From Auanema rhodensis (Eukaryota; Animalia; Nematoda): a stretch of 64,000 nucleotides of DNA. Position numbers and translations under genes: made by a program. The stretch spans positions 6,696,001-6,760,000 of the forward strand of contig OZ059898.1 of the NCBI GenBank assembly GCA_964057225.1. The letters are read 5' to 3'. This document shows, one piece after another, positions 14,986 through 22,800 of the stretch (positions are counted from its first letter, which is position 1; every line of letters starts with the position of its first letter). Below the pieces are notes generated by a model, which saw only the letters and a program-made list of their open reading frames with translations, did no database searches and was not told where the DNA came from.

Positions 14986-15984
14986 AATTTCTGTACCATG
15001 ATCAACGAGAAACTCAAGATCTTAACACTACTATCCTAATAGTATTTTTTCTGTAAATTATCAGTTTTATATAATCCTTTCCTCTGTTTCCTGTAAATTT
15101 TATGTTTTATAATGATCACTTTTATATAATTTCTGTTTCCGGACTTTATGTTGTTTAAATTATGACCCAAAGTTTCACCTGTTGGCATGTCATGTTCTTT
15201 TTTATCTGTTACTGCTCTGTTGCCGGTTCATATGAGCAGTATTCCATTTGAATAAATGCGAGTCTGCGTGCTATGTTTGTAATCAAAGTTTTTGACTGAA
15301 TCGTGTAGGCCTGGTCTCGGGGTCGTTAGTTTAAAAAAATTGTTGTCTCGACTTTATGTTTGATTTTACTTTTTGAATGAAAGTTTGCTTGTGTTCATGT
15401 GTTATGTTTTCTGTGTATTCATTCTACATGCTTTTTACATATTATTTTCAATTTATTCACATAATTTAAGCATATAATCTCGAAAATTCATAAATTCTGA
15501 GGTCAAGAAACATCGTTTGTTTGGAAAAAATAACATCCAAATGTCGTACAGAGTGCGTCAATTCTATTTATCTCACAATGCGAAACAAAAAAAGAAAATG
15601 AGTTAAAATATATTTCTCAAAAAAATAAGTTTATTATCGGAAAATGGAAAGCTAATTTCTGGAGATTCTTAAAAGAATTGTGATGTCATAGTATTTATTT
15701 TCTAGAAGGTTAATTGAAGTTTGACTTTGTGCAGTAAACCGAATATGTAGTGAATATTACACAGATAATCATGGATCACAATTTTGGAAAAATTACTGAA
15801 TTAGAGATATCTTTGGGGCATTTCATATTATAATTATATAATAACAAATTGTTTTTATGTATAATATATATATATATATCACCAAATAGGTTTTGTTTAG
15901 CCTACACAATTAGACTAGTGCATAAGCCTAAACCCTTTTTTTGATTGCAATTGTTGAAACAATCACCTAGCTCTAACTAACTCG

Positions 15985-16332
15985 TTAAACGGAATATAAA
16001 AATATTTCCGAATTTATTTGATATTTCTGGGGAAGTGGTTGACCATCAGGTCCTCGTTCCCCAGTAGAAGGCGGAATTACAATATGTTGTGGTATAGTTA
16101 TACCTCCACTCATCGGGAAAGCATTTGGATCTGTGAGATTGCTGTCAATCGTTGTTTCTTTTCTAAAAATTCGATTATTAGCAATAGCGCATAACGAAAA
16201 ACTACTTACGTTTTATCTAATGTATCGTCTACGGCAGATTGTTTGTCCTCCCGATGCCGTCTTCTACGAACAGATCTGTCATCATCGTCTGGTCGGTCTC
16301 TATCTCTGTCCCTGTCCCGATCTCGTTCACGA

Positions 16333-16385
<53 letters not shown>

Positions 16386-19300
16386 ATCACGGTCTTTTTT
16401 GCACCGTTTTCGATCATCTCTGTCTCTATCATAGTTCCTATTTCGATCCCGATCTCTGTCGCGATGATGTCGTGAATGTTCACTTCGTGGTCTACAATAA
16501 CATTTATTCTGAATTATATTTGTTTTTCAAGTTACCTATCACTTCGATGATGACGATGATCTGTAGTTGCGGTAAATTCAGATTCTGAATATCGTGATTT
16601 ACTACGATGACGTCGACGACTTCCGTCTCGATGATAGTGTGATCGATCTGTAAAATAATTTTGAATTCAATATTATTCATCGAACTAACCATCTTTTCTA
16701 TGAGCTCTTGAATCTGAATCTGAAGAATAGTCAGATGAATTATAGTTTCGATTTCGTGATTTTCGTCTTCGAGATGAGCTTCTAAACCATAAATTATTGT
16801 AGGGTTTCATCTTACTAATAGGATATACCTGTGATTTTTGCTATGACGACAATCTTTATGAGAAACTAAAGTTCCATCATAAATTGATGGTACAGAACGA
16901 GAATGCTAGAATAGGTATGTTTTCAAACGCTTTGTTTAACTAAGCTTACTTGAATCGGGAAAGATCCATGAGCAACATCCCTGCTTGGTGATACTGGCTC
17001 ACTGTTAACTTCACCCTTTTCAGAAGCTATTTTTTGTTGAACTTTCACCCAGTTTGAGACAGGATTGTCATCCTCGGGTGGTAAATATAATCCAGTAGCT
17101 CCGGATTTCGGCCTTCTTGGTTCCTTGTTATAACTCATAAGCTATAATCAAGATTTATATATATATATATATATATATTATCAAAGCCAGAGCTGTTACC
17201 TCGTTCACATCCGTTGGATAAGGAGGTGGTATCGGCAACGGTGTCATGGGAACCCCTTGTGGTGAATATGGTGATATATATGGCTGATGAATTGCTGAAA
17301 CAGAATATTTTTCTTCATTGTTTTGAAAGGAATGACTTACGAGCTTGATAATTAGGATAAGGACTTTTTGATCCTCGATGTAATCCGTCATCTGTAATTG
17401 TTGATTAATTAGCAAAAAGTAGGCACACAGCAGTTTCATTCAGTTGAGTTAGCATGATGTTATTCGAATTCAAACTCAATTAAAAATTTAAATATTACCA
17501 TAAGAATCCAGAAGATCACGTCTACTTGAATATCCATTGCGTGTGTATCGTATATTCCTTGATTTGCCTTCGACAACATCAGTGGTAGCAGTGATGCGTC
17601 GATAGTACATCATTACCACTACGACGCAATATATCTAAATAAACATATAAACAATTCTTTTTTCTGATAAATATTGATCTTACATTGATAAAAACTCCAA
17701 TAATTTCTAAAATAGTTAGAGCCATCCAATAGTCGCGTACATCTCCTGCCCACCACATAATACAATATGCTAAGGAGCATAATATTGTTGAGATCATACA
17801 AGGAAACCATGGCCACACTAAGTATCGTGACCACTAAATTTTAAAATTTTTATTAAAAATTGTGAAATTCAAAACAAACTAACCGTGTGAACTCCATAAA
17901 TCATAGCTATAGAGGCAAATAGTAGAAAGAAGGCTGATATTAAACATAATACTTGAATAACAAATAGACCTAAATTGCTGTTTTTTAATTTCATAATTTC
18001 ATTTTTAATTTCGAATTCATTTTTTTAGAAGCTTTATGGTATCTCGTAAGTTTAGTATTATATTCTTTATTGAACCCGGTGATCTATGCTTGGTAAGGAA
18101 TGTAAGTCTACCTTATTCTCTCTCGTTTCATCTTTAGAGAAATATTGAAAGGACGAACGTGTGACGGGAAGAGAGAGAGAGAGAGAGAGATGGAAGGGGG
18201 GGAGAGAGAGAGATAGACTACAGTATTTACTCAAGCTGTCAGTAATATATGCAAGCATGAGTGTTAGCTTTACTACCCGACATATGCTCATATACGTAAT
18301 ATTTGAATTTCGTATGAAAATTAATTGTAGTTCTTTACAAATTATTCTTATACTTAACAACATCATAGCTCACATTTCTTATAAAAAAAGTTGATGATTG
18401 TCATCCATTTCATTCAATTTTCAATTAAACATGCTGTACGTATCTTCATGCTTAAATGAAAATTTCTTCTTAATCATATAAACATATTAAGAAATTATTT
18501 CGAAGATGAAAATTTCGTAAAAATAGGATTGAATTGGCCTCATGCGTATAACAACAGTTTTCACACTTTCTCAAAATGTAATGTTTACCAAATAGCCTTA
18601 GAGGGAAATCTTTCTACATACATGGGAGTGTCCTTGGCATAACAAATATAAGAAATGATTATATATATAAGCACAAGATAGAACTGGATATATTCATGGA
18701 TATATGTGAATTTTATGTAAAAATGAGTTGTTTCTCTCCCAAATCAATCTTACCTGTATAGTAACGCTCTTCGGGACTTTGCCAGTATGATTCATAATAC
18801 GATGGTATATCATATCGACCATAAGTATTGTAGTTAGGAAGAAGGGTATTAGCAGCTCGATCTCTTTCATATTTGATAGCTGCCATTTGCCAGCCCATAA
18901 TGCCGAGCTGTGCAATACAGAACACCTGAATATTCACGTGAAGTTTCCGTGATTTCACAAAAAAAGTAGAAGATGTGAGCTATTTGCTTGTTCTTCATTC
19001 AATGATTCATTGAACATGTTCGATCAAGCGAGCTTATATGCAACTTTATACACGATAGAGCCGTACTAGTCACCCTTGGGGAAGTCTCAAACCTTATTAG
19101 ATGCTTGCTGACAAAAAAAGTAATTTGAATAAACGAGATACATATGCTTCGTTTTTTAATTATATTAATTTTGATATAGAAAAAATGTTTTTACTATACA
19201 AACTTGCCTTCGATTATTCTGGATGTTCGTGCTGTGGATGCACCAACACACGGACAGTCCCATTCACACTGTAGGTTGGCTTGTGCCATCGTTACAGAAC

Positions 19301-19802
19301 GACAGTGATTCAGAACACCAGTCTGCCATCCGAATAGGAAAAGTGAGGCTATGGAGTAGACCTGCAGACAGTCGTTTCTCGTGGTTTTAACAAAATTTTG
19401 ATTTGAATTTTGCTGTTAATGGTTAAGAAATCAAAAAAATTTAAGTATAGAATTCACATTAGAGTACACGCGTCCGGTCAGGCATTCACGCATACCCGAT
19501 TGTACTCTATGATAAGTTTATTTGTAAAGCAATATAAGACTACTTGCGAAAAAATAGCCACTGTTGGCCATATCATTCATTCAATTCACTTCTCAATACT
19601 TAATTTTAAAAGTTTTAAAAATTGAAGCATATGTTGCACAGCTTCTGGGCATTTGTGATTTGCTGCACGGCTCTAACGTGTTGAAGTCTCTTTGTGCTCT
19701 CTTTGAAACTAACTAATATCAAAATGAACTTACCACAGTCCATATTCCAATGGAAACGGCGCTATCTTTAAGACTAAAACAACAACACGGGTTGCAACCC
19801 AT
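15985..19802 (-). CDS. Four-transmembrane protein (LAPTM/tetraspan-like layout) with long Pro-rich then Arg/Asp/Ser-rich cytoplasmic tail; alternative exon 2
   Basis: Exon 1 (19802-19734) MGCNPCCCFSLKDSAVSIGIWTV; exon 2a or 2b; then GLFVIQVLCLISAFFLLFASIAMIYGVHT|WSRYLVWPWFPCMISTILCSLAYCIMWWAGDVRDYWMALTILEIIGVFIN|IYCVVVVMMYYRR..., PPPY, SR/RD repeats, ending QKYQINSEIFLYSV with stop at 15987-15985. All junction phases checked and consistent. Confidence 0.85.
16333..16385 (-). repeat. Coding hexanucleotide repeat (TCTCGG)n, about 8 copies, encoding Arg-Asp repeats on the minus strand
   Basis: Visible directly; lies inside an exon of the four-TM gene. Confidence 0.9.
18754..18925 (-). other. 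Alternative exon 2b (172 nt, phase 0 to 1)
   Basis: attcag|GTG...ACAG|gtaaga; open frame VFCIAQLGIMGWQMAAIKYERDRAANTLLPNYNTYGRYDIPSYYESYWQSPEERYYT(G). Confidence 0.85.
19208..19361 (-). other. Alternative exon 2a (154 nt, phase 0 to 1, GC donor)
   Basis: ctgcag|GTC...GAAG|gcaagt; open frame VYSIASLFLFGWQTGVLNHCRSVTMAQANLQCEWDCPCVGASTARTSRIIE(G). Confidence 0.8.
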
Positions 19803-22800
19803 GCTTATAAATATGAGAAGCTGATTATGCTATATCAAGTTGATAATTAGCCTGGTGAAGCTTTCCAGTACATAGTAAAATGAATAATAGATGAATAAAG
19901 CTCACAGAAGAACTGTGTCTGAAATAAGAAATAAAGAAAATTATTGTTTAAATCATTATTTGAATATAGAATATGAAAATTACAAGACAATTAAAGATGA
20001 ATGTATAGTGAAAAGAGAAGAAGAACGGCCTATGTATTATAAGTTGAGCAAAATAATAATACTGAGATGCTTCTAGTTTCAACGGTCCGACTTCGGAATA
20101 ACAATCAATAAAGCAAACAGGACGAATCAACTGGAATGAATCATGAAAGACGGGGGTGTAGTCAGGATAGTATCTGGACGAAGAAAGACAGGAGGAATAG
20201 ACGAAGAGGGCAATTGAAAGAGAGAGGGGGGAAGAGTTTGAAGCTGATAACAATATGCTGATACAGAACGGAACGTGTTGCCTAAATAATAGATTTTTCG
20301 AATGGTCCCATGACGACAAAAATGTTTGTAAAGAAGCTCTATACTTGAACTAAGAAGTGAACAAATTCCTAACAGTGATGTATGAATGAAGGACATGAGA
20401 TAGGTTAGAAAACAGTGGGCAATTGAATGACTTCTTTTGATTCTTTCACTTCAAATCTCTTGAAACAATTGTGCTAGCACTGGAAGGATGATATATGAAA
20501 TATATATGAGAAGGTTCGTTTATCTATTAGCTGACGTAAGACTTGCTACAACTATCTACAACGTTTTGATGACGAGGTTTTGTATATTATTCATATTTGT
20601 ATATAGAGAGATGATCGACGAAGGTAGAAAGCATTGCGCGAAGCCTTAGGGAAAAGGAGAAGAGATGGGAGAATAAACGTTCTAGATCAGAGGTGAAGGG
20701 GAGGAGAGTATATGAGATAGAGGCTGGCTGAACTGCACCACCAATTGTACTCAGCATATTCTGTATACGAATGTTGATGTGGGAGCAGACAGGAGAATGC
20801 AAGCTGAAGGGCTAATGATGAGAGAAAGAGAAATATGAAAGAGTAGCCTCAGGGAAAGCGAAACGTTGGATAGCATATGCAGAAAGAAAAGAACGACCAG
20901 CTATGATCAGAAGGTGGACAGTAAACAAGCAACAACGAATTCTGAAACCGAGGGGGGGGGGATCAGAGGACACTTCTTATGTTTCTGCCGGTTAAACATT
21001 GCAGAGGACAAATGCAAAGATGAATTTTCGTTCGAGTGTTTTGAAAATGAACTTCTGAAATAATACTTAGAATAATATCTTTTTTTTACTAAAATAAACA
21101 GTAAAACATTGTTTATTTCTTAAACAAAATAGGTTTTAAGCAGGTTGATGCAGTGAAAGTAAAGATTTACTGATACAATATGTCAAAATGAAGATTTTGT
21201 ACTTAAATCAAATAATAATATTGAAAGAATAAATAATCCATGAGTCATGGATATATCAAAATTCTAGATACTATTCAAGCATTATGAAATCAGCTATACA
21301 GTTCTCCACTAATACTTTCCCACGTGTTCTTCATCACTGCTCTGAAGTTTTGTACGTAGGCGTTCTTCTGCATGATGTCAACAAAAGGTGACGAAGATGA
21401 GGAAAATTGATTTAACACAATCTCAGCACAGAAATCTGATTCATCTATTCATGCAAGAAGGTTGGTTATTACAAATGGAGACCGCATGTTGTATACAATT
21501 AAGAGCTTGCTTGCTGTCTGTCATCAAAGATATTCATCTGAAGAAATGGAGATACGCATATGGATGATTAGCAGTAGCTTAAGGTCAATTCAGCCGCCTT
21601 ATAATCCGTTGAAACACTTTCAGGAGTATTGTTTAACATTGATAAGGTGCAAGGATTAAGATGAAGGATTTGGAAAGATAAATAGAAAAGCAACCGTTCA
21701 CAATGAATGTTAAGAAATAAATATTAATTTTGATATTTCACGTGAATACGTGAATACGTGATATCACGGTAGTACTTATTAGAATATGGTGTTTACACAT
21801 TCAATAATAGATGTAATGTTTGTCTAATAAAAAAGATTTGTAATTAAAGAATGAAAAAACATTCATTTACTTTAAAAAGAAAAATAATTAAAACATGGCT
21901 ATGAAGATGTAATGATAACATTTCTTTTTTCATTTTGGATTATAAATGCTTGTATAAATTAATATAATATGAAATGTAATAGTATAATAATTAAAATCTT
22001 TATTATTATATAGTTAGTTAGTTAATCAACAAAATGGTTAGCTAATTCTGAATTGTTACATTCAGCTGACCCTATAGATGGAACGAAACGTAATATGCAA
22101 ATGAAGGTAAACAGTGTCTTGAACGAACAGAGGATAACCGCAGCTCGTACCTACGGGTATGAGAGAGATTATGGTAGGATAAAGAGAAATAAAGAAAAAG
22201 AGATAACTATTAGAGAGACTGAAAGACGTTACATCGAGAATAGAGTATGACAGTTAGATATAATGCTTATAACGGATATAAAGAGAAAAAGAGAGAATAA
22301 GAGAGAATAAGAGAGGAATAGTAAGGGAAATAAGCAAAAGAGAAAATATTGGTAAACCTGCTACATATAAGAGCTAGGAACTACCAGTCGTCTACTATTA
22401 AGGGATTACGGGCTAGGATTTCGAATGCAATAGCTATTGCGAATTGTTGGAAGCGGCTAAAGGAAGGAAAGGATTAAAAGCTGAGAACTATAGTTATATA
22501 GTTAGTAATTGTAATAATAATAATAAGATTTATATAAATGTTCTACAAGTTTTAAAATATAATTCGTGTTGATGTGGAATTTATGAATGAAAGACATAGC
22601 ATATGGAATGAGACATCAGTGGGTGTTGAAGAAGATGATTCAGAATATGATTTTCGATCAAAATTTTGAAATACACATTTGAATATGATTCAAATATTTT
22701 TTAATTTATTGATAATATTTTGAAAAAATAGTAGAAAAGTCACTTATGAAATAGAAAAATAGTGAAAATAAACGAATGATAGATATGTATATGCATCAAT

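What the first reader, a model, noticed from the sequence alone, without database searches (positions are those of the whole stretch)
18754..19361. Mutually exclusive exon pair swaps the first loop of a four-TM protein
Seen: two exons (19361-19208 and 18925-18754) lie between exon 1 (ends phase 0) and exon 3 (starts phase 1). Each is 3n+1 long, open, starts with Val and has GWQ at the same offset (VYSIASLFLFGWQ vs VFCIAQLGIMGWQ). Including both or skipping both shifts the frame, so exactly one should be used. Inference: an old exon duplication giving two isoforms with the same TM1 end but unrelated first loops, one with four Cys (C..CEWDCPC) and one Tyr-rich with no Cys in the loop. This would be a splice-switched extracellular/luminal surface on an uncharacterised membrane protein. 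The ORF track misses exon 2a altogether.
Basis: partly seen in the sequence, partly recalled or inferred. Interest (0 to 1): 0.8.

Follow-up and report, generated by a model that had tools for sequence, protein, structure and literature searches.

The report
Known mutually exclusive exons, tetraspan gene
A nematode membrane-protein gene really does use one or the other of two tandem exons for its first outer loop, but this is the orthologue of a switch already verified by RT-PCR in the C. elegans gene W06F12.2, so the finding is confirmed rather than new.

Summary
Exons 19361-19208 (154 nt) and 18925-18754 (172 nt) lie on the minus strand between exon 1 and exon 3. Both are 3n+1 and open, and both share the end of TM1 up to GWQ. 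Spliced transcript contigs from four runs of one study join exon 1 to 2a to exon 3 and exon 1 to 2b to exon 3. No 2a-2b or exon 1-exon 3 joint is listed. Using both exons or neither gives an early stop.

The gene is the orthologue of C. elegans W06F12.2. Its exons 2a (154 nt) and 2b (172 nt) are listed by Kuroyanagi et al. 2014 as a verified, NMD-dependent mutually exclusive pair.

Added here:
- The cluster has the same order in Trichuris, filariae and rhabditids.
- Spirurina and Trichuris carry a third exon.
- Strongyloides has two hard-wired genes instead.
- Exon 2a here uses a GC donor, where four orthologous loci read here have GT.
- The protein looks like a pasiflora/DUF4728-type tetraspan.
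- A predicted RNA helix encloses exon 2a in this species only.

The parts
19734..19802 (-). Coding part of exon 1 (23 codons, phase 0 end): Cys-rich N-terminus and first half of TM1. The transcript contigs reach about 19924.
19208..19361 (-). Exon 2a, 154 nt (3n+1): end of TM1 plus a 38-residue loop with four invariant Cys.
19206..19207 (-). GC donor of the intron after exon 2a (AAG|GCAAGT). The intron 19207-17970 is GC..AG.
   Evidence: (joint 17968>19207 with 3 ambiguous letters; no GT is possible in that range)
18926..19207 (-). 282-nt intron between 2a and 2b. It is long enough to be spliced, so steric exclusion does not apply.
18754..18925 (-). Exon 2b, 172 nt (3n+1): end of TM1 plus a 44-residue Tyr/Trp-rich loop without Cys.
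17884..17969 (-). Exon 3, 86 nt, enters in phase 1: TM2.
17684..17833 (-). Exon 4, 150 nt: TM3 beginning with the WPWF (PW) motif, and the start of TM4.
15985..17634 (-). Exons 5-13: end of TM4 and a tail of about 380 residues rich in Arg/Asp/Ser; stop codon at 15987-15985. Exons 5-12 are supported by joints. The end of exon 12 (16210) and exon 13 (16162-15985) are inferred from sequence.
19665..19688 (-). Candidate 5' arm (in intron 1) of a long-range RNA helix that encloses exon 2a.
   Evidence: (I6)
19046..19076 (-). Candidate 3' arm (in the 2a-2b intron) of that helix.
   Evidence: (I6)

Best explanation
This is the orthologue of C. elegans W06F12.2, a four-helix membrane protein of 557 or 563 residues with a long charged tail. 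Its second coding exon exists in two tandem versions, and each mRNA carries exactly one. Both versions encode the outer half of TM1 up to GWQ. After that, 2a encodes a 38-residue loop with four invariant cysteines, and 2b encodes a 44-residue Tyr/Trp-rich loop. Exclusivity rests on frame. Both exons are 3n+1, so double inclusion or double skipping gives an early stop, and such mRNAs are removed by nonsense-mediated decay. That removal is shown in C. elegans and inferred here. The result is one tetraspan scaffold with two alternative first loops. The loops are probably extracellular or luminal and probably bind different partners; that is inferred. What selects the exon in a given cell is unknown.
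For: Sequence and frames. RNA: in all four runs one contig carries e1-2a-e3 and another e1-2b-e3. Contig depths of 2a and 2b are similar, and their sum is close to that of the constitutive contig: 48.7 vs 53.1, 21.2 vs 25.3, 17.4 vs 19.6, 24.7 vs 25.7. Orthology: the C. elegans locus has exons of 69, 154, 172, 86 and 150 nt in the same order, with 84% (2a) and 88% (2b) protein identity. C. elegans, C. briggsae, Haemonchus, Nippostrongylus and Steinernema isoform pairs differ by exactly six residues. Published: W06F12.2 2a/2b is a homologous ME cluster, 154/172 nt, with NMD dependence 'Yes' (PMC4165533). Constraint: the four Cys of 2a are invariant from Trichinella to Caenorhabditis, and the 2b loop is 86-100% identical across clades III-V. 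Four helices are predicted in both isoforms.
Against: The RNA evidence is assembled contigs from one study. Contigs drop rare forms and give no strand, tissue or stage, and their depth is a poor measure of level. NMD was not tested in this species. The loop structures are modelled poorly (pLDDT about 40-57), topology is inferred, and no function is known for the gene in any species. Some annotations in other species start inside 2b (MGWQ...), so an extra internal start cannot be excluded.
Confidence: 0.93

Rival explanations
1. Only one exon is functional, and the other is splicing noise or a decaying duplicate.
For: Exon 2a has a weak GC donor and a poor acceptor. The ORF list covers only its second half.
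Against: 2a and 2b have about equal contig depth in four runs. 2a is 94% identical to Nippostrongylus and 82% to C. briggsae, and its four Cys are invariant as far as Trichinella. Strongyloides keeps a separate gene hard-wired for each form.
Confidence: 0.02
2. Exon 2b is mainly reached from an internal promoter or trans-splice site between 2a and 2b. That would give an N-terminally truncated protein, so the pair would reflect alternative starts rather than a splice switch.
For: Annotated products beginning inside 2b exist in C. briggsae (548 aa) and Brugia pahangi.
Against: The e1-2b joint (18923>19732) is present in all four runs. The 228-nt contig is fully accounted for by 26 nt of exon 3, 172 nt of 2b and 30 nt of exon 1. 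RT-PCR in C. elegans showed single-inclusion forms.
Confidence: 0.1
3. The choice is set by competing RNA structure. A long-range helix between intron 1 and the 2a-2b intron loops out exon 2a and so favours 2b.
For: The best local duplex between the two introns is -32.5 kcal/mol against -23 +/- 2.7 in shuffles, with 0 of 100 shuffles as good. The MFE and centroid folds of 19700-19030 are both closed by this helix, z = -5.5. A second, nested AT-rich pair exists (I1). The other intron pairs are unremarkable.
Against: There is no comparable duplex in C. elegans, Trichuris or locus L002, where intron 1 is only 40 nt. Shuffles kept single-base composition only, and three intron pairs were tried. 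No closer relative was available to test covariation.
Confidence: 0.2
4. They are two independent cassette exons that merely tend to alternate.
For: The 282-nt intervening intron could be spliced, so double inclusion is physically possible.
Against: Both are 3n+1, and double inclusion or double skipping gives stops. No such joint is listed. The depth of 2a plus 2b is close to the constitutive depth.
Confidence: 0.03

Closest known systems
C. elegans W06F12.2 (WBGene00012306) exons 2a/2b, mutually exclusive cluster (Kuroyanagi et al. 2014, Worm 3:e28459, PMC4165533)
   Same: Orthologous gene with the same exon order and the same lengths (154 and 172 nt, both 3n+1). It has the same flanking exons (69 and 86 nt) and the same two loop types.
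   Different: The intervening intron is 282 nt here and 129 nt in C. elegans. The 2a donor is GC here and GT there. Contig depths are roughly equal here, against 28 (2a) and 80 (2b) reads in smg-2 L1 larvae there. NMD dependence was shown there and not tested here.
Pasiflora / Fire exit / CG15098 (Ikebana) tetraspan family of Drosophila, Pfam DUF4728, said to be related to LAPTM4 (PMC4582180; bioRxiv 10.1101/2024.04.13.589362)
   Same: Four helices, a PW motif at the start of TM3, and weak DUF4728 and DUF7027 matches over TM2-TM4 in 21 and 20 of 22 orthologues.
   Different: Most matches lie below Pfam's cut-off. The protein is 2-3 times longer because of an Arg/Asp/Ser-rich tail. The papers read here do not mention an alternative first loop for the fly proteins. 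No Drosophila sequence was compared directly. A junction role is untested.
Claudin-10a/10b (from my own knowledge, not tested here)
   Same: A tetraspan in which alternative exons replace TM1 and the first extracellular loop, changing the exposed surface while keeping the scaffold.
   Different: Claudin-10 uses alternative first exons with their own promoters, not internal mutually exclusive exons. It is an unrelated family. Its loop swap changes ion selectivity, and nothing comparable is known here.

Membership tests
Mutually exclusive exon cluster (homologous, frame/NMD-policed type) | Tandem alternative exons between the same two constitutive exons, each joined to both in RNA | tested here: met
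   Joints e1-2a, 2a-e3, e1-2b and 2b-e3 in all four runs
Mutually exclusive exon cluster (homologous, frame/NMD-policed type) | No productive double inclusion or double skipping | tested here: met
   Both exons are 3n+1. There is a stop 56 nt into 2b if both are used and 27 nt into exon 3 if neither is. No such joint is listed, within the limits of contigs
Mutually exclusive exon cluster (homologous, frame/NMD-policed type) | The exons are homologous (arose by exon duplication) | tested here: met
   hhalign probability 95%, E 1.7e-8, but over the first 21 residues only. The paper lists 17.5% aa identity and files the pair as homologous
Mutually exclusive exon cluster (homologous, frame/NMD-policed type) | Aberrant forms rise when NMD is disabled | not testable with these tools
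   Shown for the C. elegans orthologue in smg-2. No such data exist for this species
W06F12.2 orthologue group | Collinear exon structure and high identity to the C. elegans locus | tested here: met
   Exons of 69/154/172/86/150 nt in both. Identity is 57, 84, 88, 86 and 76%. There is one copy in the window
Pasiflora / DUF4728 tetraspan family | Four transmembrane helices | tested here: met
   AlphaFold models of both isoforms of the Nippostrongylus orthologue show four long helices, pLDDT 70-83. The orientation in the membrane was not tested
Pasiflora / DUF4728 tetraspan family | PW motif in TM3 (PMC4582180) | tested here: met
   WPWF at the start of exon 4. W-P-W is invariant or nearly so in 22 and 16 orthologues
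Pasiflora / DUF4728 tetraspan family | Pfam DUF4728 match above the gathering score | tested here: inconclusive
   21 of 22 orthologues match at E <= 0.1, best 3.4e-6. Heterodera (27.6 bits) and Ditylenchus (26.9 bits) pass the 26.7 cut-off, while Caenorhabditis scores 14-15 bits. Single exons of the window give nothing
LAPTM4/5 (Pfam Mtp) | Mtp domain match and conserved PY motifs in the C-terminal tail | tested here: not met
   No Mtp match. The window protein has one PPPY, but 14 of the 16 orthologues checked have no PPxY in the tail

The most novel reading that the evidence does not exclude
The two loops, or three in Spirurina and Trichuris, give a pasiflora-like tetraspan distinct extracellular binding specificities used in different cells. 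Both are indispensable. The cluster has kept its order and exon lengths since before the split of Dorylaimia and Chromadoria, and Strongyloididae replaced it with two single-form genes. In this species a lineage-specific GC donor and an RNA helix enclosing exon 2a tune the ratio.
Probability: 0.3. Interest if true: 0.5.

Novelty: already known. Interest (0 to 1): 0.25.

Why it matters
For this genome it corrects the gene model: exon 2a and its GC-AG intron are real and should be annotated as a second isoform. More broadly, W06F12.2 has no known function, yet its alternative loops are among its most conserved parts. The whole phylum keeps both, either as exons or, in Strongyloides, as two genes. 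That makes isoform-specific knockouts in C. elegans a cheap and well-motivated experiment. The switch itself is published, so a specialist would not be surprised.

Tried and rejected
- **Pfam on single exons:** no match.
- **LAPTM idea:** dropped. The PY motif is not conserved and there is no Mtp match.
- **Fold searches of the models:** only generic helical bundles (PDB, best E 0.36) and bacterial four-helix proteins with TM under 0.5 in the ESM Atlas.
- **Third exon copy in this window:** none.
- **Binding motifs of known worm splicing regulators** (GCAUG, CUAAC, GUGUG, UGUUGUG, UAAGUU, GCACA) in the three introns of four species: no shared pattern. There are three GCAUG downstream of 2b here and none there in C. 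elegans.
- **Whole-intron duplex energy:** not significant, 4 of 60 shuffles as good. A first script timed out.
- **GC donor as a conserved feature:** rejected. C. elegans, L002, A. viteae and S. ratti have GT. The 'GKF' read-through product of C. briggsae fits either.
- **Tree of the constant region:** it did not resolve when the Strongyloides genes split.
- **Look-ups of non-longest isoforms:** failed.
- **The joined spliced protein of this window:** never sent to any search or fold tool. Searches used single exons by reference or orthologous proteins returned by the tools.

Full report
**What is in the sequence.**
The gene lies on the minus strand.
- Exon 1 runs from the ATG at 19802 to 19734 (23 codons, phase 0) and is followed by GTAAGT.
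- Exon 2a is 19361-19208, 154 nt. Exon 2b is 18925-18754, 172 nt. Both are open in the frame set by exon 1, and both are 3n+1.
- Exon 3 begins at 17969 in phase 1.
- An in-script frame check showed that either exon alone leaves the frame open through exon 11. Both together give a stop 56 nt into 2b, and neither gives a stop 27 nt into exon 3.
The 2a acceptor is also poor for a nematode.
- No third copy of the exon exists in the window.

**RNA evidence.**
One sequencing-run search found four runs of one study that hold 37-39% of the sampled words of 15900-20100. That share is about the exonic fraction.
- Their contigs, laid on the stretch, skip 12 introns with proper ends. So they are cDNA, although the record does not say so.
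- In every run one contig of 228 nt holds 26 nt of exon 3, all of 2b and 30 nt of exon 1. Joints in every run also link exon 1 to 2a and 2a to exon 3. In X2-X4 these are listed as a 210-nt contig holding exon 2a between about 27 nt of exon 3 and 30 nt of exon 1; the X1 piece is not among the rows shown.
- No 2a-2b or exon 1-exon 3 joint is listed, even at a 1% threshold.
- The 2a-to-exon 3 joint has three ambiguous letters. Within that range the only consensus-like intron is GC..AG (19207-17970), and no GT is possible.
- Contig depths of 2a and 2b are 24.4/24.3, 11.8/9.4, 10.9/6.5 and 11.6/13.1. Their sums are close to the constitutive contig (53.1, 25.3, 19.6, 25.7). That is what one-or-the-other use predicts.
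- Caveats: these are assembled contigs from one study. They drop rare forms, and the tool itself calls their depth a poor measure.
- The same joints define exons 3 to 12. The end of exon 12, exon 13 and the stop at 15987-15985 are inferred from sequence. They give products of 557 aa (2a) and 563 aa (2b).

**How the searches were done.**
The spliced model was searched exon by exon, by reference. The joined protein was never sent to a search or fold tool. The only joins were frame and length arithmetic inside scripts. Structure and family work used orthologous proteins that the tools returned.

**What the gene is.**
- Exon 2b alone finds 23 short products, 69-100% identical over 77-100% of the exon. 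They come from Ancylostoma, Heterorhabditis, Teladorsagia and filariae, among others.
- Exon 2a finds Nippostrongylus (94%) and C. briggsae (82%).
- A full HMMER search with exon 4 gave only 42 hits. All those whose source was looked up are nematodes.
- Cluster look-ups and a word search with a C. briggsae isoform name the C. elegans member as W06F12.2.
- Isoform pairs differ by exactly six residues in five species: C. elegans 562/568 and 566/572, C. briggsae 574/580, Haemonchus 558/564, Nippostrongylus 564/570 and Steinernema 492/498.
- Alignments show that in four of these species (Steinernema read from its printed N-termini instead) the pairs differ only in the exon 2 segment.
- The C. elegans locus has exons of 69, 154, 172, 86 and 150 nt in the same order, with a 129-nt intron between 2a and 2b.

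**It is already published.**
The only paper in the library that names W06F12.2 is Kuroyanagi et al. 2014 (PMC4165533). Its Table 1 lists exons 2a (154 nt, 3n+1, 28 reads) and 2b (172 nt, 3n+1, 80 reads) among RT-PCR-verified homologous mutually exclusive clusters. It gives 35.5% nucleotide and 17.5% amino-acid identity, a 129-nt intervening intron and NMD dependence 'Yes'. The window holds the orthologous event with identical exon lengths.

**How it most likely works.**
- *Shown here:* the two exons are used one at a time, and the frame forbids both or neither.
- *Shown in C. elegans and inferred here:* mis-spliced forms are cleared by nonsense-mediated decay.
- The 282-nt intervening intron rules out steric exclusion.
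- At the protein level the switch keeps the outer half of TM1 and replaces the first loop.
- Profile comparison of 13 2a exons with 19 2b-type exons finds homology over the first 21 residues only.
- In 2a the four Cys, and the P and V of the CPCV motif, are invariant from Trichinella to Caenorhabditis.
- In 2b the W, Q, I, P and three Tyr are invariant, and the loop is nearly identical across clade V.
- AlphaFold models of the first 209-215 residues of both Nippostrongylus isoforms give four long helices (pLDDT 70-83). TM1 extends past GWQ, and the rest of the loop is poorly defined.
- *Inferred:* the Cys-rich N-terminus is cytosolic and the loop faces outward or into a lumen, where the 2a cysteines could form disulfides. 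The two loops probably bind different partners.
- What chooses the exon is unknown. No regulator motif is shared among species.

**Family.**
- Fold searches gave only generic helical bundles.
- Pfam gives weak DUF4728 and DUF7027 matches over TM2-TM4 in 21 and 20 of 22 orthologues. Only Heterodera and Ditylenchus pass the cut-off.
- DUF4728 marks the Drosophila pasiflora / Fire exit / CG15098 tetraspan family. According to Deligiannaki et al. 2015, its wider members share only a PW motif in TM3.
- That motif is present here as WPWF at the start of exon 4, and it is conserved.
- I therefore call the protein pasiflora-like, not a proven member.
- A LAPTM reading was tested and not met.

**Evolution of the cluster (added here).**
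- Trichuris suis has exon 1 (69 nt), 2a (154 nt), two 2b-type exons and exon 3 (86 nt) in that order. The cluster therefore predates the crown nematodes.
- Clade III worms have a third exon between 2a and 2b. Brugia malayi has three isoforms. The exon is intact in Parascaris, Toxocara, Gongylonema and locus L005.
- In the Acanthocheilonema viteae assembly that third exon carries a stop and lacks a donor.
- Strongyloides ratti has no switch. One gene has exon 1, 2b and exon 3 fused without introns. Another gene 0.6 Mb away has 2a followed by a 59-nt intron. Relatives show the same two genes. A tree could not date the split.

**A species-specific oddity.**
- A helix between intron 1 (19688-19665) and the 2a-2b intron (19076-19046) is the best local duplex between these introns. 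It scores -32.5 kcal/mol against -23 +/- 2.7 in shuffles, and 0 of 100 shuffles match it.
- The helix closes both the MFE and the centroid fold of 19700-19030, z = -5.5. It would loop out exon 2a.
- It has no counterpart in C. elegans, Trichuris or locus L002. I keep it as a low-confidence rival or modifier.

**Verdict.**
The switch is already known in the model species. Interest is low to moderate and rests on the conservation pattern and on the gene's unknown function.

Noticed in passing
L007:4001-4324 and L008:3956-4385 (Strongyloides ratti): Instead of the exon pair, Strongyloides has two genes. One has exon 1, 2b and exon 3 fused without introns. The other has 2a and only a 59-nt intron before exon 3. 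The same two genes appear in S. venezuelensis, S. stercoralis and Parastrongyloides.
   Followed up: partly
L001:8899-9070; L005:8-182; proteins P0148, P0109, P0107, P0041: Clade III nematodes carry a third alternative exon (2b-like) between 2a and 2b. Brugia malayi has three annotated isoforms. In the A. viteae assembly the copy has an in-frame stop and no GT donor.
   Followed up: partly
L009:3244-9002 (Trichuris suis): Same order in a clade I worm: exon 1 of 69 nt, 2a of 154 nt, two 2b-type exons, then exon 3 of 86 nt. The deposited gene model fuses parts of the two 2b-type exons.
   Followed up: partly
window 19206-19207 (minus strand): GC-AG intron after exon 2a, used in all four RNA runs. 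The orthologous donor is GT in C. elegans, L002, A. viteae and S. ratti.
   Followed up: yes
window 19918-19925 (minus strand): Exon 1 contigs of three runs end at 19924 with one differing letter over genomic TTTCAG|A. This fits the 3' end of an SL1 leader spliced at 19919/19918. The contig letters were not seen.
   Followed up: no
window 19665-19688 and 19046-19076; also 19606-19634 and 19140-19168: Two nested complementary pairs in the introns flanking exon 2a. The outer one closes the predicted fold of the region. It was not found in C. elegans.
   Followed up: partly
window 16330-16400 and 18161-18220: A (GACCGA)n repeat encodes a long Arg-Asp run in exon 12 and breaks the transcript contigs. 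A (CT)n tract sits in the 2b-exon 3 intron. No contig was laid on 15900-16322, so the last exon is unsupported by RNA.
   Followed up: no
proteins P0074, P0026, P0043, P0054, P0144, P0105: Public gene models in several nematodes wrongly include both 2a and 2b, or read through the 2a donor (77-aa and 90-aa products in C. briggsae and Nippostrongylus). Names given by sources ('Zinc finger protein', 'Anoctamin', 'TonB-dependent receptor', 'ALBINO3') look spurious.
   Followed up: no
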